From the NCBI RefSeq assembly GCF_006345805.1, contig NC_043002.1, positions 45,694,001-45,758,000 on the forward strand: DNA of 64,000 nucleotides, read 5' to 3'. Below are positions 5,832 to 58,474 of this stretch, one piece after another; the stretch's first letter is position 1, and each line of letters starts with the position of its first letter. A program made the translations under genes and the position numbers. The notes beneath the pieces were generated by a model that was not told where the DNA came from, made no database searches, and saw only the letters and a program-made list of their open reading frames with translations. Source of the DNA: Octopus sinensis (taxonomy: Eukaryota).

Positions 5832-8208
5832 GCATACCTTGGCTTAAGTCATTCTCAATTATACGTCGGTTTTCAAAAATAATATATGGAAGAATAAAAA
5901 TCAAGTGAAGTCATTTAATTTGACATTGCGTCTGTCTGCCACAAATATTGGAATCGTAAAATCACTAGAAAACCGTTAAAAGCACATAAAATCATATTAG
6001 TGCACAATAAATAAGAATAAAAGTATATAAAATCATATTAAGATACGTACAGTAAATGTTAAGATACACATCATAAAGAAGTGTACCTTAGTGAACGAAA
6101 TCATGAAATCAGCTGTGTTGTCTTATTTATAGGTCATTTGGAGCTCATATTGCACTGTAGTTCCAATATCTACCGTTAGGCATTGTTATCACTTGTGCGA
6201 TTGATTTGAATTCAGATTTGTTTACATCTGTTTATCAGCTACTTTCTCATTCTCATTCATTTGTGACTTTACTTTTTGCCCCTCCCCCCTTGACTCCTCT
6301 AAGAAAATTCATAGTGAAAGCAATTAAGTGTCATGCTACAGTGCTGGAACATAAACCAGCTGTGATAAAATGCCATGGAAAAGGTAAAAAAGTTGTAGCA
6401 GTTACACAATCTTTTGGTATGAGTGAGACAACTTATATCAAATCTGAAGCCCCAGGGATGAAGAACACTCTACTGTTAGTCAAGAAGTCATTCAAAAGAA
6501 AGTGTTGTCTTTGTTTGAGGACCTGAAGAAAAAATATCCAGATGAGAAAGATATAGGGTTCAAGACAAGTCTAGGATGGTTCATGAGATTTAAGGAGCGA
6601 AGAAGTTATCACTCCATTAAAAAGCAAGGTGAAAGTGTATCAGCTGATGAACAAGCAGCAGCAGAATTTCCTAATGCATTAAAGAAAATCATCGAAAAAA
6701 CGGGCTTCTTCCTGAATAGATTTTTAATGTAGACAAAACTGGATTGTATTGGAAAAAATTGCCAGACTGTTCATTCATTTCCAAGGAGAAAACTATTCCA
6801 GGCTACAAGGTCTCAAAAGAACGTGTGACCATTATGTTGGGAGGTAATTGTGCAGGAGATTTTAAGTTAAAGCCATTGCTTGTGTATCATGCACACAACC
6901 TTCGTGCCCTGAAGAACATACCCAAGACATCTCTCCCTGTTATATGGATGGCTAATTCAAAAGCATGGGTTACTGTTGTTGTTTTTGAAGATTGGTTCTT
7001 CAATCAGTTTATCCTAGTAGCAGAGAAGTACTGTAAGGAGAAGGGGATTCCTTTTAAGGTTTTACTTACCTCAGATAATGCTCCTGGCCACCTGCACAAC
7101 ATTACTGTCATGTACCTCTCTCTGAACACCACATCTCTTCTACAGCCAATGGATAAGGGAATAATTGCTCTCTTCAAGTGTTACTATATGAAGCGTACAC
7201 TGCAGCAAGCAATAGCTGCAACTGATCTTGATGAGTCCATTACACTTCATGACTTTTGGAAGAGATATGATATCTATAAGGCTGTACAGAACATAACAGT
7301 GGTGTGGAATGATGTACAGAGTACGGCTATGAATGGGGTATGGAAGAAGCTATACCTGCAATTCGTGAATGATTTTAAGGGGTTTGATAATGTTGCCATC
7401 AACAAAACGTTGGTGACTGCGAGCAAAAAAATGTATTTGGCGGTGGAGGATTTCACAGATTTATTTGAAAAATGGCAAATGAGGATTTGATAGAGCTTCA
7501 CAAGCAGCAAAATAAAGAAGAAGTTGAACCTGAGCCACATCACCTTACTATTAAGAAAATGCACCAAGCATTTGCATATATCGAAAAGGTCTTTCTATGT
7601 TCGAGGATATGGATCCAAATGCTCAACACTTTTCCAAGATTATGGGGCTTGTTATGAAGCTTTTGCTCCTTATAATGTAATCCTCGAGGAAAAGAAGACA
7701 GTTCAAGGACCTCTCAACCAGTTTTTTAAAGCGCTTCAAATGACAAGAATAGTCAGTCAGCTGTTGATTTTGATGATCATAGCCATCTACATCCGCAATG
7801 TAAACCACCAAATTGTATGTACATATTGGTAAATTTGAAATAATTTAGTTTTTTTACTATTGCAAAATAATAATAATTACTGAATTTGTTTTTTGAGCTT
7901 AAAAAAGGCTTTTATTTTACCATGTTCTATTGCAAACTGCATTCATTTACCATGATGTATGGTAAACACCGCCAAATTGTATTCGTGAATTTAGATTACT
8001 TTTTTTTTACTGTACTGTATTAAAAAATAAAAATTATTTGTTTGTAAGCTTAAAATAGGTTTTTATTAATCATGTATTATTGAAAATGCATTCATAAATA
8101 AAGTACAGAACTGGGAATGGTTATTATTGGTTTAGCCTTGAGACAAGTTAATTCGACTTAAGTCATGTCACTTGCAACCAACTAACGACTTAGAGTGGCG
8201 TATGCCTG
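5829..8208 (+). mobile_element. Full-length Tigger/pogo-family DNA transposon with disrupted transposase, in a MyD88 intron
   Basis: TIR ends CAGGCATAC / GTATGCCTG flanked by TA; CENP-B-like HTH (FKTSLGWFMRFKER) and DDE_1 motifs (KAWVT, SDNAPGH, LLQPMDKGII) in ORFs 6502-6732 and 6744-7490. Confidence 0.93.
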
Positions 8209-10336: not shown

Positions 10337-10560
10337 CTAACTCTAGCATTTAGCTTATTCTGTCAGTTGTAATGTTTATTTATTCACACTTTTTTGAATT
10401 AATCATGCATTATTTTGTAGCTTTGAGTTTTCCATAATGTGGGTGTTTATTTTTAGAATGACTGTAGGGTAGGTGGGAGCAGACTGATTTTGCCTGTTTG
10501 AACATAAAACAGGTAGAATAATTGGGCTGGATATGGCTGATTGAAATGCTAAAGGGTTAA
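10337..10560. mobile_element. piggyBac-type MITE, second family (further copy 16563-16788, partial near 14716-14790)
   Basis: Shared internal sequence (TTGTAGCTTTGAG, GTTTGAACATAAAAC) and terminal AATGCTAAAGGG-TTAA. Confidence 0.7.
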
Positions 10561-11335: not shown

Positions 11336-11522
11336 TTATTTCCGGTACCACAACATATTATGATGCCTTTGTTTGTTATGCTAAAAATGACTTATGGTTT
11401 GTCCAGCAAATGATTACCAAATTAGAATCTCCTCCACATAATTTAAAACTGTGTATTGTTGATCGTGATGTTATACCAGGTTCTTCGAAACATACCATCA
11501 ATGCCAAATTAATTGAAGATAG
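11336..11522 (+). CDS. MyD88: MyD88 TIR exon (box 1 and BB loop), 187 nt, phase 1-2
   Basis: ttcag acceptor, GTAAAT donor; (V)ISGTTTYYDAFVCYAKNDLWFVQQMITKLESPPHNLKLCIVDRDVIPGSSKHTINAKLIED(R): YDAFVCY box 1 and DRDVIPG BB loop. Confidence 0.95.
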
Positions 11523-13588: not shown

Positions 13589-13732
<144 letters not shown>

Positions 13733-15424: not shown

Positions 15425-15684
15425 GTTCTCGCCAAAAGAAGCTCATCCCACTCATCATTGAATACTGTACTAAGTATCCAAAGATTTTACACCAAATTAC
15501 TCCATGTGATTTCACCAAGGGAGATATGCATGAATGGGCTTGGAAGCGACTGGCTTCTGCTATCAAAGCACCTTTTGACTTTTCTGATTACAGTTCTAAT
15601 GACAGTGAACTGAATGAGCTGACTCTCAAGCTACCATTATGTCGGTCTCTTTCCGTTCACAGTAAAAATGAATCAACATCCTGA
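15425..15684 (+). CDS. MyD88: MyD88 terminal coding exon (TIR C-terminus plus Ser-rich tail)
   Basis: tttag acceptor phase 1; (G)SRQKKLIPLIIEYCTKYPKILHQITPCDFTKGDMHEWAWKRLASAIKAPFDFS...NESTS*; KKLIP and W.WKRL motifs; stop TGA 15682-15684. Confidence 0.95.
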
Positions 15685-15822
15685 AGACTCTATGTGGAAT
15701 ATTCCCTGTTTTTTTTTATTTTTAAAAAAATACTCTTTTTTAATTCATTAAATCTCTGATTGTCATCAGTGGTTTACTCATGTAGATATATAATAGGTTA
15801 AAAATTTAAGAGTTTCAACTGT

Positions 15823-15828
15823 AATAAA
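15823..15828 (+). promoter_or_regulatory. Candidate MyD88 polyadenylation signal (AATAAA)
   Basis: First canonical AATAAA after the stop codon (ATTAAA also near 15747); the next clear AATAAA I noted is at 16792. Confidence 0.45.
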
Positions 15829-15847
15829 CCATCTAAGAAATATAAAC

Positions 15848-15994
15848 ATGTACATTATTTACTTTATTTACATTCAACGGATATTTGTCTTCATCTTGTT
15901 TGTTGTTAGCACAATGTTTCGGCTGATATACCCTCCAGCCTTCTTCTGGTGTCTTGGGGAAATTTCGAACCTGGGTTCTCATTCCTAAGGTATT

Positions 15995-16032
<38 letters not shown>

Positions 16033-16337
16033 CAGGTCACTGCTTGGAATCAAACTCGGAATCTTGGGGTTAGTAGCCCATTCTCTTAACCACTTAACCC
16101 CAAGATTCCGAGTTTGATTCCAAGCAGTGACCTGAACAACAACAACAACAACAACAACAAAATACCTTAGGAATGAGAACCCAGGTTCGAAATTTCCCCA
16201 AGACACCAGAAGAAGGCTGGAGGGTATATCAGCTGAAACGTTGTGTTAACAACAAACAAGATGAGGACAAATATCTGTTGAATGTAAATAATATAAATAA
16301 GGCACATAATTCCTCATCTCTTAAATATAGAACTGTA
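15848..16337. repeat. Long inverted duplication of a tRNA-headed, hammerhead-bearing repeat
   Basis: Arms 15848-16072 and 16095-16307 are near-perfect reverse complements around a 22-nt loop. Confidence 0.95.
16202..16247 (+). ncRNA. Minimal type I hammerhead-like motif with mutated core (CAGAAGA); mirror copy on - at 15908-15953
   Basis: GACAC-CAGAAGA-A-GGCTG[gagggtatat]CAGCT-GAAAC-GTT-GTGTT: stems I and II pair, palindromic AACGTT stem III. Confidence 0.6.
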
Positions 16338-19300
16338 TAGATATGTAAATTGTATGAAATCTATTTTTGAAGTTTATTACTGAAAAACACCTACATCACC
16401 TTATAAATTTTATTTTTATATATCACCATCATTCAATTGTTGTAGCAGATGGTCCTAACCAAGGTACCACATGGAATTTTTACCAACTGTGATCTCTTGG
16501 TCATGAGCCATCTTTTTAATGAAACAATTTTTTTCAATAACTGAAGACAAAAAACAAAACCTTGACCCTTTAACATTCAGATTACTCTGTCAAATGAAAT
16601 ACTTATTTAATCACATTGTTTTGAATTAATCAGGGGTTATCTTGTAGCTTTGAGATTCTGATGATGTGATGTTTTTTTTTAGAATAACTTTGTAAGGTAG
16701 ATGTGAGAGGCTGGATCTGACTAGTTTGAACATAAAACAGGTAGGTTATTTTGGCAGGATACAATCAGTTTAAATGCTAAAGGGTTAACACAATAAACGT
16801 GTAAGTGTCATGGGAAACATTGAATGAAGGTGGGACACATGTTTACTAGAATGGTCTATACTGCCAGTGCTACATGTTTGTCTGAGTATCTTATAGTTGA
16901 TAAAATAATACAGTAAAAATACCAGAAACAATTTATTGTACCGTTTTTAAAATTTTTTATTCTTTTTAATGGTGTGGGTCTAAAGGAAGGATCTGTACCT
17001 ATAGCCATGGCAGACCTTCCAAAACTTTTGAGATTGTTGTTATTGTTGTTGTTAATATCTGAAATAGTTGCAAACTGACATCTATAGGAAAAACGAGAAG
17101 GTAGTGAATTCTAGAGGATCAATGTTCAAGGAAGGAAAGATAGGGCAAAATTTTGATGTAGGAGCTGATAGCATCATCATCTTTATACCACCAACACCAA
17201 CACCATCATTTTAATGGCCATTGTTTCATATTTGCATACGTTAGATGAAGCTTGTTTAAGCAGGGGTTTTTTCTACATCCAGATAAGATTATCTTCCCCA
17301 CTAGTCTTTTGAACATAAATAGCTCAATAGAAGGACATGCTATTGCAGAGGGATGCAAACAAAGGACACTATTTGTATGATTGTGATTTGGGGGATTTAC
17401 AATTAGCATGCATACACACACACACGCATACTACAGACACATATACAACAGGTTTCTTCCAGTTTCCATCTACCAAATTTCACTCAAAAGGCATCAATCC
17501 ACCTGTAACTATATTAGAAGACATCAACCAACTGTCTGTGCAGTAGAAATTAATCCTAAACTATATGATTTGAAGGCATCCTATCTTAATCACACACCAA
17601 ATATATTTCTTCATTTGTTTTTACATCCATCTTTTCATACTGGAATGGGTTATATAAATATATATTACTGAGGCATTGTTTTAAAACCTGATTCTCTTCC
17701 TGTTACTAACCCTTAACTGTTTTTCAATACAAGTTATTAAAATTAATATTAATAATGCAAGATGATGGTTTGTACTTTTACTTGTTATTTTAATATTCCA
17801 GGATTAGGATCCCTTCAGGAAATCTTTGGAGAAAAGGTGTTGTTAGTCAGCTAACAATTTTCTTGTTTGCATCACCAGACCTATATATACACTCACACAT
17901 ACATACATACACACATAACACAGACTTCCATACAGTTTTTTGTATTAAATTTCACTGACAATGCATTTATTAACCTGAGGCTGTAGTAGAAATACTTGCA
18001 CAAAATATCACACCATGGGACCAAACCTGAAACCATGTGGTTGATAATACAATCTTAAATATACATGGCAAGAATGAGTAATAACATATCAAGCTATCTT
18101 ATTTTTTGAATTAAAATAAAATGCTGGACCATTCCTTTTACAATTAGAAGAAAAAAGACTATTAGAAGGCCATTAGAAGAAAAAAAAAATTCAGTAGGCT
18201 GTTAATCAGACTAAGTATGCAAAGTAGGATTTCAAGTTATTGGAGCCATCACACAGAGCCAATTCTGCTCAGACTTGATCTTCAGTGGTTAGGGCCTTGA
18301 AGAACCAATTGGAGACTTTACTGATTGCAGTAGGTGATAAATCTGTCCCTGAGGTTCTGTCATGTCCTTTGAAATATATATATTGGAAAGGGCACAACAG
18401 AACTTAGTCATAGCTGTGTGTTAAGAAGTTCACTTCACAACCACATGGCTTGGCACCTTTGACAAGTTTCTTTTACTGTAGCTCTGAGCCATCCAAATTT
18501 TTGTAAGGGAGCTTCTTAGATAGAAACTGTGCAAAAGTTCATTATGTGTGTGCGTGTTTGTGTATTGAGTTTGTGTTTATCTCTGTCCTGATAGTTTAGT
18601 AGTCTGTTAAGAGGCCAAGGGAATAAATGCAGACTTAAAATAGGTACTGACTAAACTCTTCTAGGGCAATGCCCCAGCATGATGACTGCAATCCTGGGAC
18701 TAAAACAAGAAAAAAAAAAAGAAAGAAATAGAATATTGAAAGATTTTTTTATATTTTCATTTGCATTCATGTTACTTTGACATGTTTGGGGTATGCAATA
18801 ATGCCAGTGAAAATGTGAAGGGGTTGAAAATGTTTTATAGGTACATGTATAAACTGTTTTAGTATACATATAAAATACTAAATAAAATGTATTTCAGAAA
18901 ATACTGTTATTATTAGTATTATTTCTCTTATTCTCATTTGTCTTCATGTTCTGAGTCCAAATTCTGCCAAGATTTACTTAGCTTTTCATCATTTGAGGGT
19001 TAATAATATAAATGCCAATTGAGTACTAGGGTTGATGTGATTGACTTTGGTAAAGCCCCACTTTGGTCATCAATGACCATGAGATAGCTCCTAGAAAGTT
19101 ACCTTCCGAGGCACAAATCCAAGATTGTTTATGGAAGGCCAGCAGTTACCCATGCATCCCAGCCTTCCCTCTCCATGCCAACAATATTATCCAAGAGAAA
19201 AGCAAAGTGTGATACAGCTTGCCACCAGTGACATTGCAACTCATTTCTATAGCTGAGTGAACTGGAGCAATGTGAAATAAAGTGTCTTGTTCAAGAACAG

Positions 19301-20299: not shown

Positions 20300-21765
20300 T
20301 TCATCATCATCATCATCGTTTAGCGTCCGTTTTCCATGCTAGCATGGGTTGGACGGGTCAACTGGGGTCTGGGAAGCTGGAAGGCTTCGTCAGGCCCAGT
20401 CAGATCTGGCAGTGTTTCTACGGCTGGATGCCCTTCCTAATGCCAACCACTCCGCGAGTGTAGTGGGTGTTTTTTACGTGCCACCTGCACAGGTGTCAGA
20501 CAGAGCTGGCGAACGGCCATGAACGGATGGTGCTTTTACGTGTCACCGGCACGGGGCCAGGCGATGCTGGCAACGGACACGAACGCATGGTGCTTTTACG
20601 TGCCACCGACACGGGGCCAGACAGAGCTGGCAACCGGCCACGAACGGACGGTGCTTTTATGTGTCACCAGCACGGGGGCCAGCCGAGGCTGGCAACGGAC
20701 GCGAGCGGATGGTGCTTTTATGTGCCACCGACACGGTTGCCAGACAGAGCTGGCAAACGGCCACGAGCGGACGGTGCTTTTACGTGTCACCGGCACGGGG
20801 GCCAGCCGAGGCTGGCAACGGACACGGACGGATGGTGCTTTTACGTGCCACCGACACGGGGCCAGACAGAGCTAGCAAACGGCCACGAACGGATGGTGCT
20901 TTTACGTGTCACCGGCACGGGGGCCAGCCGAGGCTGGCAACAGACGCGAACAGGTGGTGCTTTTACATGCCACCGACACGGTTGCCAGACAGAGCTGGCA
21001 AACGGCCACGAGCGGACGGTGCTTTTACGTGTCACCGGCACGAGGGCCAGCCGAGGCTGGCAACGGACACGGACGGATGGTGCTTTTACATGCCACCGAC
21101 ACGGGGCCAGACAGATCTGGCAAACGGCCACGAACGGATGGTGCTTTTACGTGCCACCGACACGGGGCCAGACAGAGCTGGCCAACGGCCACGAACGGAC
21201 GGTGCTTTTACGTGACACCGGCACGGGGCCAGGCGAGGCTGGAAACGAACACGAACGGATGGTGCTTTTACGTGCCACCGACACGGGGCCAGACAGAGCT
21301 GGCAAACGGCCACGAACGGATGGTGCTTTTACGTGCCACCGACACGGGGCCAGACAGAGCTGGCAAACGGCCACGAACGGATGGTGCTTTTACGTGCCAC
21401 CGACACGGGGCCAGACAGAGCTGGCCAACGGCCACGAACGGACGGTGCTTTTACATGTCACCGGCACGGGGCCAGGCGAGGCTGGAAACGAACACGAACG
21501 GATGGTGCTTTTACGTGCCACCGACACGGGGCCAGGCAGAGCTGGCAAACGGCCATGAGCGAATGGTGCTTTTACGTATCACCGGCACGGGTGCCAGACG
21601 AGGCTGACAGCGGACACGAACAGATGGGTCACTTAACCCCTGCTTTCTGATATATGATTTGATTTTGATTGTTATCACTGGTCTTGCCGGGTCTTCTCAC
21701 GCACAGCATACTTCCATAGGTCTCGGTCTCTGGTCATTTCCTTGGTGAGACCTAGAGTTCGAAGG
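20300..21765 (-). mobile_element. 3' end of an RTE-type LINE: last codons, 3' UTR with expanded minisatellite, (GAT)n tail
   Basis: Minus strand LRTLGLTKEMTRDRDLWKYAVREKTRQDQ* (~21670-21765; RTE-like DRxxW C-terminus); conserved GTTGGCATTAGGAAGGGCATCC..CCAACCCATGCTAGCATGGAAA and (GAT)n end. Confidence 0.8.
20467..21620. repeat. GC-rich minisatellite, ~19 units of 60-61 bp
   Basis: Anchor GGTGCTTTTA recurs about every 60-61 nt from ~20529 to ~21570. Confidence 0.97.
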
Positions 21766-36956: not shown

Positions 36957-39365
36957 CCAAGTATTTCTACATCCCATTGCTCATAGTTAACCCATAGCTG
37001 GGACCTAATAGGTGGTATTATTCTGGGTCAGAGTCAACCTGGGAAAAATAGTGTCTAAGAGGTGGTTCCACACTTCTCAAAACCATGGACCTATTGAACC
37101 ATACACACATGTATACATATATCATATACATAAATATACAAGCATACAAACACATATGCTTACACATACACACCTATAGGTATACATATTGTTTCATATC
37201 AGTATTAAAGGAAATATTTTCAAATTCTGCAGAGGCTGACTCTGGTTTTCATCTTTCGGATTCTATAAAATAAGTACCAGTTGAGTGTATCCATTACAAT
37301 TAGTTTATAATCTATGAATCTGAAGTATATTACATGTTTATGCTATGGTAGTATTCTGTTCTTGGTTGTAAATCAGCAGATGCTGCAAATGCAGGTCATA
37401 AGGGGGAACCCATGGCTACTCCATCTATTTGTACAAATTACAATATGGGCAGTGAAGAAGTATTTCATTTGTACACATCATTTTCTTTTATCTTTTATCT
37501 CTTACTTGTTTCAGTCATTAGACAACGCTCATTCTGAGGTATTGGCTCGAATAGGCTTTAGTCAAATAAATTGACCCCAATATTTATTTTTATTTTAAGC
37601 CTTGTACTTATTCTATCAGTCATTTTTTTTTGTCAAACTGCTATGTTATGGAGGACGTAAACAAACTAACACTAGTTGTCGAGCAGTGGTGGGGGACAAA
37701 CACAGACACACATATATACACAGCAGGCTTCTTTCAGTTTCTGTCTACCAAATCTACTCACAAAGCTTTGGTTAGCCCAAGGCTATAGTAGAAGGTGCCA
37801 TACAGTGGGACTGCAGTGGTTAGAAAGCAAGCTTCTTACCAAAGTGCCACACCTGTGTCTATCATGAATAGTTTTTTAATAAGTTTGTTGGTACTGCAGC
37901 TGGTTTTGGTTTTGAATGTTTATATACATTCTCCATTATGATTTCTATCATTTCTGCCAGTGAACAAATTTTCTACACTTAAGGTGGAGATGTTAACTTC
38001 TGTATTGTTTTCTTTTAAAATCTGCAAATATTCCTTATATTATATTTCTCTTGTATGTATTCTCTGATAATATTGTTTATTTGTTTGGTGATTAAATAAG
38101 CAGATGTATTTATTTGTGATATTATGGGCCTGAGAGCATTGGTTTGTTTCTACATCTTTTTCTGTGCCATATATATATATATATATTCCTTCAAAGAATG
38201 GAAAGTCGAGGTCAAGGGAGCCTATTGTGCACATATTCTTTTATTCTTTCGCTTGTTTCAGTCATTTGATTGCAGACATGCTGGAGCACCGCCTTGAAGG
38301 ATTTTAGTCAAACACATTGACCTTAGGACTTATTTTTTAAGCCTAGTACTTATTCTACCAATCTCATTCTCTGAACCACTAAGTTACAAGGACATAAACA
38401 CATCAACACCAGTTGTCAAACGGGGATGTGGGGACAAGCACAGACACAAAGACGCACACACACACACACACACATGGTAGGCTTTTTACAGTTTCCATCT
38501 ACCAAATCCACTCACAAGACTTTGGTTGCTCTGAGGCTATAGCAGAAGACACTTACCCAAGGTGCCATGCAATGGAACTAAACCCAGAACCATGTGGTTG
38601 GGAAGCAAGCTTCTTACCACATAGCCACGCCTGCACCTATGGTGAAATAAATTTAATTTTACTTGTAGTTAATTTGTGAATTTCTTGCTTTTAGTGAATA
38701 TATTTTTGTCTCTTTGTAAATTATTAATTTTTGCATTACATTTGTTTCTAACCCTGATGACAAACTTTACTTTTATCACACTTACAAACTTTTATGTGGC
38801 TTTTATCTTTTAAATTGTGTAATGCCTTTTTAAGTTATTTTTTATTTATTATCTGTTTATAATTTTTTTTCATTCTATCTTTATTATTTTATGGATTTAA
38901 TAACTTCATTGTTCCAAAAATATGTGAAAGAAACTTATATGAAACATGAAAAGCCAGTAATAAAAAAGAAAAACAGTGGGACATAGTTGTGTCTTTAATA
39001 TAACACACAAGCAGTTCCTCACACACACACACACACACACTCACGCATGCATGCATACATACATACATACATACATATACACATATACGTGTGTATATGA
39101 ATACATAGAGGGTGTTTGGGTTAAATTTAACAGTTTACATAAAAGGAAAACTAATACAATATATTTTATTCAATAGTAAAAGTATTTTAAAAACTAAAAA
39201 ATTATCAACTAGATTATGGCTGGGAGATAACAATTTACTCAAAGTAGCTGCTTTCAGCTTCCACTATAGCTTCAAGAAGGCTCCAGAACCTGGCACAAGC
39301 ATTCCTCATTATGTCCTTGGGAAAATTTTTGAATACCAGCAAATAACACTGTATACGAGGATAAA

Positions 39366-39990: not shown

Positions 39991-40508
39991 TATAGAAAAG
40001 TGAAGGAACTCGAAGAAATATATAAACCAACCAATATTTTAAATGCTTATACATTATACCAACAAACACAATAAAGAGGTCGCCATAAGAAAGGAGCATT
40101 TATCAATTCAGACAACAACCCCCACTGTATAGCAGCAGTACTTGACCCCTGTTGAGTTCAGAATTATTGAAGATAGTCATGCCTTAAATGAAATCAAACA
40201 AAAAAAATGTACTACTCATCCTTAAAAATCTGCTGAATGAATAGCAAAATAAATAACAAGATAAATCCAACACCACCACACACACCTCCATCCCTATGCT
40301 ACTACCACTCCTTCCTCTATTCCCATCACCTTCTACTCCGCCTCACCAAATACACACAGAAATGCCCACACAACTCACTTGACCTTCATACTGGTAAAAA
40401 GAAAAAAACACCCCTTTGTGTTTCATCCACTAATGCCATATCAACAACAACAATAACAACAACGAAAAATACCTTAGGAATGAGAACCCAGGTTCGAAAT
40501 TTCTTCAA

Positions 40509-40554
40509 GATACCTGATGAAGGCTGGAGTGAATATCAGCTGAAATGTTGTGTT
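40509..40554 (+). ncRNA. Minimal type I hammerhead-like motif, same family, intact CTGATGA core
   Basis: GATAC-CTGATGA-A-GGCTG[gagtgaatat]CAGCT-GAAAT-GTT-GTGTT inside repeat copy 40442-40612. Confidence 0.65.
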
Positions 40555-40908
40555 AGCAACAAACAAGATGAAGACAAATATCCATCAAATGTAAATAAAT
40601 GTAAATAATGTACTTATTTATTCTACAGTAGACCCAGCTTAAATTCACAAAGACATTCTCCTATCCAGCTTCAATAATACCAAATCCCCCCCCCCACCTC
40701 ACTCTTCCCTTTCTCTTTTTCTTTATTCACATTCTTATTCTTTTCCTTAACAAATTTAGACATTTACCCACTCCCATATATTATTTCTCCACAAATATAT
40801 TTTCCCTTTTATTCACTCACTGAGCTTTCCATACATTTTGGATCAAATGTCCTGCAAGTTAACATGGGATCCCTTGACAATGTAACCTTCATTTGATTAA
40901 GGTATCTT

Positions 40909-40992
40909 CGGCCTGATGAGTAGCTAGTGAATTACCACTTGTTTGGGTAACTATTACTTCTGAGGTTCTGCTAGCTGTGAAACATATATAGC
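40909..40992 (+). ncRNA. Hammerhead-like motif with long stem II loop
   Basis: CTGATGA-GTAGCTAG[~43 nt]CTAGCTGT-GAAAC-ATATATA-GC; 8-bp stem II, weak stems I and III. Confidence 0.55.
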
Positions 40993-41071
40993 ATGGATTT
41001 TATCTAATCCATTCCCTAATTTTGGATACATAATAATAATTCTCCCTATATATATATATATATATATAATG

Positions 41072-41538
41072 AATAAATAAAATATATGCATATATGTACA
41101 TACTTACATCTACATGTATATATACATGCATACATATATATATATATATGAGTACAGGACACCACAAATAAATGTAGAACACAACGAGAGATGAGAACAT
41201 AAAATCAAACAAGGAAACAGACTTTTTTTAAACAACGAAAAAACAGAGTACAGGACAAACAATACAAGGAAAATTCCCCTTCATCAGCTGTCCCTGGTTC
41301 GACTCAAAGTGTGTTTCGAAACACAAGGAATTTTCCTTGTATTGTTTGTCCTGTACTCTGTTTTTTCGTTGTTTAAAAAAAGTCCGTTTCCTTGTTTGAT
41401 TTTATGTTCTCGTCTCTCGTTGTGTTCTACGTTTATTTGTGGTGTCCTGTACTCATATATATATATGTATGCATGTATATACATGTAGATGTAAGTATGT
41501 ACATATATGTATGTATATATGCTTATATTTTATTTATT
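41072..41538. repeat. Long palindrome, ~200-bp arms, 49-nt loop
   Basis: GAGTACAGGACACC..GGAAAATTCC (to 41277) mirrored from 41327 GGAATTTTCC..GGTGTCCTGTACTC. Confidence 0.95.
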
Positions 41539-41593
41539 TATTATATTAGTATATGACCGAACGCACGCGTTATTTCTCTATTTCTCTTCTCCA

Positions 41594-41630
<37 letters not shown>

Positions 41631-41636
<6 letters not shown>

Positions 41637-42028
41637 CAAAATAAGAAAATGGAGAAATACACCTTAATCAATAATCAACTACCAGATAATACCCATTCAC
41701 ATAATTTATTAACCAACTACATATGAACATCAAAGTCAAACATAATAGTACAGAACAAAGCAGTGCACATCAATGAGTAATATGATACAATAAGTACAAT
41801 ATGTATAAATAAATATGAATAAATATAAATATAAATATTTATTTATATTTATTTATACATATTGTACTTATTATATCATTACTCATTGATGTGCACTGCT
41901 TTGTTCTGTACTATTATGTTTGACCTTGATGTTCATATGTAGTTGGTAAATAAATTATATGAATGGGTATTATCTGGTAGTTGATTATTGATTAAAGTGT
42001 ATTTCTCCATTTTCTTATTTTGTATTAT
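41631..42028. repeat. Long palindrome, ~190-bp arms, AT-rich centre
   Basis: ATAATACAAAATAAGAAAATGG.. mirrored by ..CCATTTTCTTATTTTGTATTAT. Confidence 0.95.
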
Positions 42029-42196
42029 GAATTTGTGGTAAAACATTTTACCTTCGCCCATATAATACAATAAATGAATTAATTGCATCGCAATTCTTAA
42101 CATTTATGTATTAACTTTGTTGGGTGCTTTACTGGCAGTATATTGGATATATGTTATCCCATGGTGGGTTGCACTCACAACCCCTATCTCAATTTG

Positions 42197-58160: not shown

Positions 58161-58474
58161 TAATTTACAAAAATAAGGGCAAAAGAAAAATTCTAATGCC
58201 AAATATGCCAAAAAAAAAGACAAATATTGTCAATAACCATTATAATTTATGCGTCTTGAAACAAACCGATAGAAATTTCTAAAAAATCCGTTATTACCGT
58301 ATTGGTCCCAATTTATGAATTAACCCCAAAATTGGGACCAATACGGTAATAACGGATTTTTTAGAAATTTCTATCGGTTTGTTTCAAGACGCATAAATTA
58401 TAATGGTTATTGACAATTTTTGTCTTTTTTCGGCATATTTGGCATTAGAATTTTTCTTTTGCCCTTATTTTTGT

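What the first reader, a model, noticed from the sequence alone, without database searches (positions are those of the whole stretch)
15823..16307. A ~220-bp-arm perfect fold-back starts 20 nt after the first MyD88 polyA signal
Seen: arms 15848-16072 and 16095-16307 with a 22-nt loop lie ~165 nt after the MyD88 stop; AATAAA is at 15823 and another at 16792. Both arms share the same core change (CAGAAGA, versus CTGATGA in the 40.5-kb copy), suggesting one arm was copied from the other locally, or that both come from one subfamily. Established: long dsRNA in 3' UTRs is an ADAR substrate and an innate-immune ligand, and coleoid cephalopods edit A-to-I very heavily. Inference: alternative polyadenylation could switch this immune adaptor's mRNA between a short form and a long dsRNA-containing, editable form. 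Inactivation of both ribozyme cores would spare the long mRNA from self-cleavage.
Basis: partly seen in the sequence, partly recalled or inferred. Interest (0 to 1): 0.7.

Follow-up and report, generated by a model that had tools for sequence, protein, structure and literature searches.

The report
Inverted SINE pair beside MyD88 poly(A) site
The 460-base hairpin just after the octopus MyD88 gene is real, but it is a young double insertion of a common mobile element, apparently made in one event and absent from a sister species. It contains no ribozyme, and nothing here shows that it regulates the gene.

Summary
The fold-back is real but not perfect. The arms are 15848-16072 and 16095-16307 with a 22-nt loop. 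The inner 66 bp match 100% and the outer 173 bp match 95%, and there is a 12-nt (GTT)4 length difference. As RNA it folds at -367 kcal/mol (z = -39.6).

The window is Octopus sinensis CM016864.1, and the upstream gene is MyD88 (stop codon 15682-15684). The arms are two head-to-head, tail-out copies of a tRNA-derived SINE. A solo copy lies at 40442-40619.

O. vulgaris carries the same fold-back. O. bimaculoides has an empty site. A single 12-bp target-site duplication (TATAGACATGTA) brackets the whole 483-bp insert (15853-16335).

The right copy has the element's full 3' end. The left copy lacks about 30 nt of that end and joins the target through a 5-nt microhomology. This fits two cDNAs made in one retrotransposition event (a twin-priming type mechanism).

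No hammerhead is present: Rfam finds none at E <= 10, and a descriptor scan finds none.

The AATAAA at 15823 is conserved in all three species. The AATAAA at 16792 reads AACAAA in O. bimaculoides.

No transcript data could be reached, so the polyadenylation-switch and ADAR idea is untested. Similar tight fold-backs occur at least three more times in this window, and published work already describes the octopus genome as rich in them.

Verdict: an ordinary, probably neutral insertion with an unusual mode of origin.

The parts
15425..15684 (+). Last coding exon of MyD88 (TIR domain C-terminus; stop TGA at 15682-15684)
   Evidence: The exon boundaries at 11336-11522, 13609-13700 and 15425 onward match the human MyD88 exon junctions. 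Pfam finds TIR_2 at 1.9e-13. The region is 99% identical to O. vulgaris MyD88-like and belongs to the same cluster as O. sinensis XP_029637543.1, which carries Death and TIR domains.
15823..15828 (+). Proximal poly(A) signal AATAAA, conserved in O. sinensis, O. vulgaris and O. bimaculoides
   Evidence: The insertion point (after 15852) lies 24 nt past the hexamer, inside the usual 10-30 nt cleavage zone. That zone is taken from established knowledge; actual use of the signal was not tested.
15841..15852 (.). Left copy of the target-site duplication (TATAAACATGTA)
   Evidence: The O. bimaculoides empty site has a single TATAGACATGTA (L002 37128-37139), and it aligns to both 15841-15852 and 16336-16347.
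15853..16094 (-). SINE copy A (the left arm plus the 22-nt 'loop'). Its sense strand is the minus strand. It runs from about tRNA position 14 (AGTGGTTAAGAG...) to ...AATAATGTAC and lacks the last ~30 nt of the element. It shares a 5-nt microhomology (ATGTA) with the target.
   Evidence: Searches give the alignment. The microhomology is read directly from the sequence.
16073..16094 (.). Unpaired centre. It is the extra 5' sequence of copy A (reverse complement AGTGGTTAAGAGAATGGGCTAC) that copy B lacks.
16095..16335 (+). SINE copy B (the right arm plus 28 further nt). Its sense strand is the plus strand. It is 5'-truncated at about tRNA position 36 (TAACCCCAAG...) and has the complete 3' end ...CATAATTCCTCATCTCTTAAATATAGAACTG.
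   Evidence: The ORF through this end translates to ...HNSSSLKYRTV. An ORF from an independent O. bimaculoides copy (A0A0L8FV75) ends ...HNSSSLKYRTI. So 16308-16335 belongs to the element and not to the target.
15995..16032 (.). (GTT)n microsatellite inside copy A. Its partner (AAC)n at 16135-16160 in copy B is four units shorter.
   Evidence: In O. vulgaris the two runs are equal in length.
16336..16347 (.). Right copy of the target-site duplication (TATAGATATGTA)
16792..16797 (+). Distal AATAAA. It is present in O. sinensis and O. vulgaris but reads AACAAA in O. bimaculoides.
40442..40619 (+). Solo copy of the same SINE body, 87-89% identical. It starts in the (AAC)n run, has no tRNA-like head, and carries CTGATGA.

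Best explanation
A 483-bp insertion (15853-16335) consists of two head-to-head, tail-out copies of one tRNA-derived SINE. It entered the genome in a single retrotransposition event. The event came after the O. bimaculoides lineage split off and before O. sinensis and O. vulgaris separated.

Most likely mechanism (inferred):
- The partner LINE nicked both DNA strands 12 bp apart.
- The bottom-strand 3'-OH primed a normal cDNA at the true 3' end of a SINE RNA. This became copy B, which stopped at about tRNA position 36.
- The top-strand 3'-OH (...CATGTA) annealed through 5 nt (ATGTA/UACAU) about 30 nt inside the tail of a SINE RNA. It primed a second cDNA, copy A, which reached about tRNA position 14.
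- The two heads were then joined with 0-1 nt of homology.
- This is the twin-priming route known for 5'-inverted L1 insertions, except that both cDNAs cover almost the whole element, so the product is a hairpin.

The insert landed 24 nt after the conserved proximal MyD88 poly(A) hexamer.

Function (inferred): probably neutral. Only transcripts that read past the proximal site would contain the ~210-bp duplex. Those transcripts would be ordinary ADAR hyper-editing substrates, like the many other such hairpins in octopus.
For: Shown:
- The window equals O. sinensis CM016864.1 (100% over 3 kb). O. vulgaris has the fold-back. O. bimaculoides aligns up to 15852 and resumes at 16336, with a 12-bp overlap that is the single-copy target.
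- No internal duplication separates the two copies.
- Copy B carries the element's real 3' end, as shown by an independent O. bimaculoides copy. Copy A lacks it and meets the target at a 5-nt microhomology.
- The loop is contiguous with copy A on the plus strand, and B has tail sequence that A lacks. Together these exclude both snap-back (self-primed hairpin) variants (reasoned).
- The arms differ by 9 substitutions in about 205 non-microsatellite positions (4.4%), and these arm differences are shared by O. sinensis and O. vulgaris. The species differ by about 0.4% (sinensis-vulgaris) and about 6% (sinensis-bimaculoides) in introns. Arms that were identical at birth therefore date the insertion between the two splits, as the presence/absence pattern requires.
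- The 17 nt near the element's 3' end resemble the target just upstream of the nick (14/17 identical; p about 0.02-0.03). This is compatible with template-target annealing.

Context:
- 5'-inverted insertions with longer microhomologies are the signature of twin priming (PMC2912911).
- The octopus genome has the highest fraction of loci forming long near-perfect dsRNA, and the strongest hyper-editing, among the species surveyed (PMC5625713).
- At least three other tight fold-backs lie in this 64-kb window.
Against: - Structure alone cannot separate twin priming at this site from retrotransposition of a read-through RNA that already contained an inverted SINE pair. That route would also give one target-site duplication, a complete 3' end on B, and a microhomology at the outer, truncated end of A.
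- Classical twin priming copies different parts of one RNA. Here the two cDNAs overlap almost fully, which needs two RNA templates or strand displacement.
- All 9 arm differences lie in the outer ~75 nt and none in the inner ~130 nt. Under a uniform rate this has P about 0.003 (my estimate). The model leaves this unexplained; gene conversion near the centre, or two source RNAs that differ only near the 3' end, would have to be invoked.
- Neutrality is an inference from absence in O. bimaculoides, not a measurement.
- The stretch 16336-16815 diverges less between O. sinensis and O. bimaculoides (3.97%) than the DNA after 16816 (6.6%). This could mean that a long 3' UTR exists.
Confidence: 0.68

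Rival explanations
1. Alternative polyadenylation switches MyD88 mRNA between a short form ending near 15850 and a long form ending after 16792. The long form carries the dsRNA and is edited, retained or sensed.
For: - AATAAA is present at 15823 and 16792.
- The insert displaced the ancestral U/GU-rich downstream element of the proximal site by 483 nt. This could weaken that site.
- The stretch 16336-16815 diverges 3.97% between O. sinensis and O. bimaculoides. The proximal UTR diverges 4.3%, and the DNA beyond 16816 diverges 6.6%.
- Octopus editing is concentrated in introns and 3' UTRs (PMC9699675).
Against: - No transcript evidence could be obtained. No Logan transcript contig carries this protein.
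- The distal hexamer is AACAAA in O. bimaculoides.
- The hairpin is absent from O. bimaculoides.
- The left arm itself supplies U-rich sequence downstream of the proximal hexamer, so that site may work as before.
- Intron windows of 400 nt range from 3% to 10% divergence, so 3.97% is not exceptional.
Confidence: 0.12
2. Origin by retrotransposition of a pre-formed dimer. An RNA read through an older inverted SINE pair elsewhere was reverse-transcribed from B's 3' end through the hairpin and was 5'-truncated inside A's tail.
For: It predicts the same single target-site duplication, the complete B tail, the truncated outer end of A, and the 5' microhomology. Arm differences present at birth would explain why the differences cluster.
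Against: It needs reverse transcription through a duplex of more than 200 bp. It only moves the question of how the dimer arose to another locus. No second copy of the junction occurs in the ~190 kb of octopus DNA held here, though that sample is far too small to count against it.
Confidence: 0.15
3. Two independent SINE insertions landed side by side in opposite orientation.
For: Inverted neighbouring repeats are the usual source of dsRNA in animal genomes (PMC5625713).
Against: - Only one target-site duplication brackets both copies, and neither copy has its own.
- Copy A lacks the element's 3' end, which is needed for normal priming.
- The heads abut with no intervening target DNA.
- Both copies are absent together from O. 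bimaculoides.
Confidence: 0.04
4. The repeat is a hammerhead-ribozyme-bearing retroelement (retrozyme or Penelope-like type), and both arms carry inactivated cores.
For: The 40.5-kb copy has CTGATGA followed 21 nt later by GAAA.
Against: - No hammerhead family matches at the Rfam gathering score in the whole window.
- None matches at E <= 10 in 15700-16450, 40200-40850 or 40900-42100.
- A minimal descriptor (boxes plus 3-bp helices I, II and III and a U-H site) finds nothing on either strand.
- By eye, helix II does not abut the boxes, and the base after the putative helix III is A, not U.
Confidence: 0.02
5. The hairpin is a small-RNA precursor (endo-siRNA or young miRNA).
For: It is a long near-perfect hairpin. 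Generic miRNA covariance models respond to it (MIR1222 65.6 bits).
Against: All those hits are below the gathering scores (90 bits or more). They are to plant families and are driven by the (GUU)n/(AAC)n stem. The other fold-backs in the window give the same kind of hits. No small-RNA data were available.
Confidence: 0.05

Closest known systems
Inverted-repeat Alu pairs (IRAlus) in mammalian 3' UTRs and introns
   Same: Two copies of a SINE lie in opposite orientation within one transcription unit and fold into a long duplex. That duplex is the standard ADAR hyper-editing substrate. Unedited, it is a ligand for dsRNA sensors. This is established knowledge; see also PMC5625713.
   Different: IRAlus arise from two independent insertions hundreds of bases apart. 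Here both copies came in one event, abut head to head, and leave only a 22-nt loop. Editing and transcription of this locus were not tested.
5'-inverted L1 insertions made by twin priming (Ostertag and Kazazian model; surveyed in PMC2912911)
   Same: One target-site duplication brackets the whole insert. The 3' part is in sense orientation with a complete tail. The other part is inverted, and its outer junction shows microhomology to the target.
   Different: In L1 the inverted part is a different, upstream segment of the same RNA. Here the two cDNAs cover nearly the same sequence, so the product is a palindrome. For the primate SINE Alu, 5' inversion was seen once in 5,554 insertions (PMC2912911).
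tRNA-derived SINEs of octopus (OK, OR1, OR2; Ohshima and Okada 1994, cited in PMC4824008)
   Same: It is a short non-coding repeat with a tRNA-like head, 5'-truncated copies, a target-site duplication, and a non-poly(A), AT-rich tail.
   Different: I could not compare it with the published consensus sequences, so the family name is unknown. This element has an internal (AAC)n run between the head and the body.
Fold-back and inverted-duplication products of LINE-1 target-primed reverse transcription (bioRxiv 10.1101/2024.12.14.628481)
   Same: Inverted duplications are generated from the DNA ends made during TPRT.
   Different: Those cases duplicate flanking genomic DNA by self-annealing of an overhang. 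Here the duplicated material is the retroelement itself, and the snap-back geometry is excluded.

Membership tests
MyD88 (gene upstream of the fold-back) | N-terminal death domain plus C-terminal TIR domain | tested here: met
   Pfam finds TIR in the window exons. The full protein encoded at this locus (P0016, O. sinensis XP_029637543.1) has Death and TIR hits. The death-domain exon lies upstream of the window.
MyD88 (gene upstream of the fold-back) | Orthology shown by exon structure and best matches | tested here: met
Every named hit among the 15 is a MyD88 annotation, except one 'hypothetical protein' and three unnamed Logan entries.
tRNA-derived SINE | tRNA-related 5' head (box A / box B region) | tested here: inconclusive
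   The head aligns to tRNA-Ser(GCT) positions 14-41 (22/28) and to the T-arm region of tRNA-Arg (23/31). It beats all 500 shuffles for Ser and all but 2 for Arg. ARAGORN and the Rfam tRNA model do not call it. The first ~13 nt are missing.
tRNA-derived SINE | Dispersed copies, 5' truncation, and insertion with a target-site duplication visible against an empty orthologous site | tested here: met
   Three copies lie in the window, and one independent copy exists in O. bimaculoides. The empty site and 12-bp duplication are shown.
tRNA-derived SINE | 3' end shared with a partner LINE | not testable with these tools
   No octopus repeat library or whole genome could be searched.
Twin-priming (5'-inverted) retroposon insertion | A single target-site duplication around a sense 3' part and an inverted part | tested here: met
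Twin-priming (5'-inverted) retroposon insertion | Microhomology between the target's second-strand 3' end and the internal priming site | tested here: met
   ATGTA is shared by the target (15848-15852, also present in the O. bimaculoides empty site) and the antisense SINE tail. Copy A starts ~30 nt inside the element's 3' end.
Twin-priming (5'-inverted) retroposon insertion | The inverted and sense parts are different, adjoining segments of one RNA | tested here: not met
   The two parts overlap over ~210 nt. This is therefore a variant of the mechanism, not a textbook case.
Hammerhead ribozyme | CUGANGA and GAAA boxes framed by helices I, II and III, with a U-H cleavage site | tested here: not met
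   The arms read CAGAAGA. The 40.5-kb copy has the two boxes, but helix II does not abut them and there is no U-H site. The descriptor scan gives 0 hits.
Hammerhead ribozyme | Match to a hammerhead covariance model | tested here: not met
   No match at the gathering score and none at E <= 10.
IRAlu-like dsRNA element in a 3' UTR | An inverted SINE pair able to form a long duplex | tested here: met
   210 bp, -367 kcal/mol, z = -39.6
IRAlu-like dsRNA element in a 3' UTR | Lies inside the mature mRNA and is A-to-I edited | not testable with these tools
   No octopus transcript or read data were reachable.
MITE / fold-back DNA transposon | Terminal inverted repeats with a short (2-10 bp) duplication, and copies that are always the whole palindrome | tested here: not met
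   Single-arm copies exist (40442-40619; the O. bimaculoides ORF copy). The arms are unequal at both ends, and the duplication is 12 bp.

The most novel reading that the evidence does not exclude
The LINE machinery that moves this octopus SINE may often prime on both nicked strands. It would then deposit ready-made head-to-head SINE hairpins in one step. That would be a mechanistic source of the exceptionally high load of long near-perfect dsRNA loci in octopus genomes, and so of their heavy ADAR hyper-editing. In this instance it would place an editable, sensor-visible duplex in read-through or long-UTR transcripts of the innate-immune adaptor MyD88 in the O. vulgaris / O. sinensis lineage only.
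Probability: 0.1. Interest if true: 0.6.

Novelty: new member of a known kind. Interest (0 to 1): 0.27.

Why it matters
On present evidence this is one more lineage-specific inverted SINE pair in a genome already known to be full of them. It should not be read as a ribozyme or as a conserved MyD88 regulator.

Two things give it modest value:
- It is a clean, datable case, with an empty site, one target-site duplication, and asymmetric ends. It shows a complete SINE hairpin created in a single retrotransposition event, which is very rare for primate Alu. If common in octopus, this route would help explain why that genome makes so much dsRNA.
- It is a natural presence/absence contrast (O. vulgaris and O. 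sinensis versus O. bimaculoides). That contrast could be used to ask whether a 210-bp duplex next to a poly(A) site changes 3'-end choice, editing or mRNA fate of an immune gene.

Tried and rejected
- Hammerhead ribozyme: rejected.
- miRNA precursor hits (MIR1222, MIR860 and others): all below the gathering scores, and the other hairpins in the window give the same kind of hits.
- ARAGORN found no tRNA or tRNA-like gene in the fold-back or in the window.
- I first read 16316-16347 as a messy 23-bp right-hand duplication of the target. I dropped this when the independent O. bimaculoides copy showed that ...CATAATTCCTCATCTCTTAAATATAGAACT is the element's own 3' end.
- Snap-back (self-primed hairpin) origin: rejected in both directions, because of the loop orientation and because B has a longer tail.
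- Selection for pairing: 5 of 5 transitions in the body give G·U pairs in the plus-strand RNA, but 2 transitions in the tail give A·C. That is 5 of 7, not significant, and transcription-linked mutation bias could explain it equally well.
- Constraint on the inner arms between O. sinensis and O. vulgaris: none can be inferred, because the species differ by only about 0.4%.
- Transcript evidence: the 178-aa TIR query found no partial proteins. The exact MyD88 proteins occur only on genome records. The supplements of PMC9699675 do not list this gene in the part held. The literature search for an octopus MyD88 cDNA found nothing.
- More SINE copies: no match in the JGI metagenome collection. P0018 has no contig on record. 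The Argonauta hians MyD88 3' flank is not alignable and has no copy of the element, so it cannot serve as an outgroup for the site.

Full report
**What is there.**
- It is not perfect. The inner 66 bp are 100% complementary and the outer 173 bp are 95% complementary (9 substitutions). The left arm has four more GTT units than the right arm has AAC units.
- As plus-strand RNA, 15823-16335 folds at -367.3 kcal/mol against -113 +/- 6 for shuffles (z = -39.6).
- The arms alone give 210 base pairs with an uninterrupted helix of 156 bp. The minus strand folds almost as well.
- AATAAA lies at 15823 and 16792, and the stop codon at 15682-15684.

**Where the window comes from, and the gene.**
- The window is 100% identical to Octopus sinensis chromosome record CM016864.1 (window position + 45,694,000).
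- The three plus-strand exons at 11336-11522, 13609-13700 and 15425-15684 encode a TIR domain.
- The protein annotated at this locus is O. sinensis MyD88, with Death and TIR domains. It has near-identical orthologues in O. vulgaris and O. bimaculoides and an 84%-identical one in Argonauta.
- The death-domain exon lies upstream of the window.

**What the arms are.**
- Each arm is a copy of one repeat, and a third, solo copy lies at 40442-40619 (87-89% identity).
- Read in sense, the unit starts with a tRNA-like head: AGTGGTTAAGAGAATGGGCTACTAACCCCAAGATTCCGAGTTTGATTCC...
- The head is followed by an (AAC)n run, a ~145-nt body, and an AT-rich tail.
- A spurious 51-aa ORF annotated in O. bimaculoides (A0A0L8FV75) is 78% identical to the ORF through the right arm. 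So the family is also present in that species.
- The element therefore behaves as a tRNA-derived SINE, a class known in octopus since 1994 (cited in PMC4824008). I could not compare it with the published consensus sequences.
- In the fold-back the two copies lie head to head with their tails outward.

**How it got there.**
- O. vulgaris carries the same fold-back.
- O. bimaculoides aligns with the window up to 15852 and again from 16336. Twelve bases (TATAGACATGTA, L002 37128-37139) match both edges.
- That is an empty site with a single 12-bp target-site duplication around the entire 483-bp insert (15853-16335). Neither copy has a duplication of its own.
- The ends of the insert are unequal in an informative way:
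  - The right copy (B, plus strand) runs to ...CATAATTCCTCATCTCTTAAATATAGAACTG. The independent O. bimaculoides copy ends with the same ten codons (HNSSSLKYRT), so this is the element's true 3' end.
  - The left copy (A, minus strand) stops ~30 nt short of that end. It meets the target at ATGTA, which belongs both to the target (it is present at the empty site) and to the antisense SINE tail.
  - At the centre, A reaches about tRNA position 14 and B only position 36. The 22-nt 'loop' is simply A's extra head sequence.
- These features fit two cDNAs made on the two nicked strands of one target, i.e. twin priming. B was primed normally on the bottom strand. A was primed internally on the top strand through a 5-nt microhomology. 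The heads were then joined (inference).
- A self-primed snap-back is excluded in both directions. If A were copied into B, B could not carry tail sequence that A lacks. If B were copied into A, the loop would have the opposite orientation.
- Retrotransposition of an RNA that already contained an inverted pair would give the same picture. It cannot be excluded without a whole-genome search for the junction.

**Age.**
- The arms differ at 9 of about 205 non-microsatellite positions (4.4%). These arm differences are shared by O. sinensis and O. vulgaris.
- Intron divergence is about 0.3-0.6% between those two species and about 6% between O. sinensis and O. bimaculoides.
- Arms that were identical at birth would therefore date the insertion between the two splits. 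This agrees with the presence/absence pattern.
- Three of the differences are at inferred CpG sites.
- One thing is unexplained. All nine differences lie in the outer ~75 nt and none in the inner ~130 nt. Under a uniform rate this has P about 0.003 (my estimate).

**The ribozyme idea.**
- No hammerhead family reaches the gathering score anywhere in the window.
- None appears at E <= 10 in focused scans of the fold-back, the 40.5-kb copy, or the 41-42 kb fold-backs.
- A deliberately permissive descriptor (both boxes, 3-bp helices I, II and III, a U-H site, type I or type III topology) finds nothing on either strand.
- In the 40.5-kb copy, CTGATGA and GAAA are 21 nt apart. But the only stem between them (GCUG/CAGC) leaves unpaired bases at the junction, and the base that should be U16.1 is A.
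- The arms' CAGAAGA is a subfamily difference in a non-ribozyme sequence.

**Relation to the poly(A) signals.**
- The proximal AATAAA (15823) and the whole proximal 3' UTR are conserved in all three Octopus species.
- The insertion point is 24 nt past the hexamer, inside the normal cleavage zone. It moved the ancestral U/GU-rich downstream sequence 483 nt away and replaced it with the U-rich antisense SINE tail.
- The distal AATAAA (16792) reads AACAAA in O. bimaculoides.
- Between O. sinensis and O. bimaculoides, 16336-16815 diverges by 3.97%. This is close to the proximal UTR (4.3%) and below the 6.6% seen after 16816. But 400-nt intron windows range from 3% to 10%, so this is only a hint that a longer 3' UTR exists.
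- I could reach no transcript data. Whether any MyD88 mRNA contains the hairpin is open.

**Context.**
- Tight long fold-backs are not rare here. At least three more lie in the same 64 kb, at 41084-41520, 41631-42028 and about 58170-58470.
- Porath et al. found that octopus has the highest fraction of loci forming long near-perfect dsRNA, and the strongest hyper-editing, among the species they surveyed (PMC5625713).
- Zolotarov et al. found most octopus editing in introns and 3' UTRs (PMC9699675).
- If transcribed, this duplex would be an expected ADAR substrate of a known kind.
- What is less usual is its origin. 5'-inverted insertions make up about 31% of L1 insertions but 1 of 5,554 Alu insertions (PMC2912911), and a twin-primed product that duplicates nearly the whole SINE is a variant of that mechanism.

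**Verdict.** This is a real, lineage-specific, probably neutral inverted SINE dimer next to the MyD88 proximal poly(A) site.
- The ribozyme reading is wrong.
- The regulatory reading is untested and is weakened by the lack of conservation.
- The single-event origin is the most interesting point.

Noticed in passing
window 6448-7487 (+): Two adjoining open frames carry an HTH_Tnp_Tc5 domain (1.1e-5) and a DDE_1 endonuclease domain (3e-33). This is a Tigger/pogo-like DNA transposon remnant inside a MyD88 intron, in the same orientation as the gene.
   Followed up: partly
window 41084-41520, 41631-42028, 58170-58470: Three further tight fold-backs. Their arms are 194 nt (88%), 151 nt (97%) and over 100 nt (99%), with loops of 49, 96 and 14 nt. 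They are unrelated in sequence to the MyD88 one. The 58-kb one looks like a MITE. No Rfam hammerhead or other family reaches threshold in 40900-42100.
   Followed up: partly
window 20472-21627; L003 39107-39421: A 61-bp minisatellite (19 copies, 83% matches; higher-order period 245). The O. vulgaris assembly holds only about 5 units at the orthologous place. This is either real length variation or assembly collapse.
   Followed up: partly
window 15923-16232 versus 15853-15922 and 16233-16307: All nine substitutions between the two arms lie in the outer ~75 nt, and the inner ~130 nt are identical. Under a uniform rate this has P about 0.003 (my estimate). Possible causes are arm-to-arm gene conversion near the centre, or two source RNAs that differ only near the 3' end.
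   Followed up: partly
window 16233-16307 versus L003 (O. vulgaris): The tail of the right arm differs at 6 of 75 positions between O. sinensis and O. vulgaris (8%), against about 0.4% in the flanks. The changes cluster in the TAAATAA-like repeats (ATAAATAAGGCAC versus ATTAATAATAATC).
   Followed up: no
window 16315-16331 versus the O. bimaculoides empty site (L002 ~37116-37133): A 17-nt stretch 4 nt from the SINE's 3' end (CATCTCTTAAATATAGA) resembles the target just upstream of and overlapping the nick (CATCTAAGAAATATAGA): 14/17 identical, p about 0.02-0.03 by shuffles and random genomic controls. The three mismatched bases are CTT against AAG, which are reverse complements of each other.
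   Followed up: partly
window 16568-16788 and 10341-10560: Another dispersed repeat (77% identical copies). One copy lies between the fold-back and the distal AATAAA, and the other in a MyD88 intron. Both are also present in O. vulgaris and O. bimaculoides.
   Followed up: no
window 15880-15935 and 16220-16275: The five transitions between the arms in the element body are all of the kind that leaves a G·U pair in the plus-strand (MyD88-sense) RNA, but two transitions in the tail give A·C. That is 5 of 7, not significant. Transcription-linked mutation bias would predict the same direction.
   Followed up: partly
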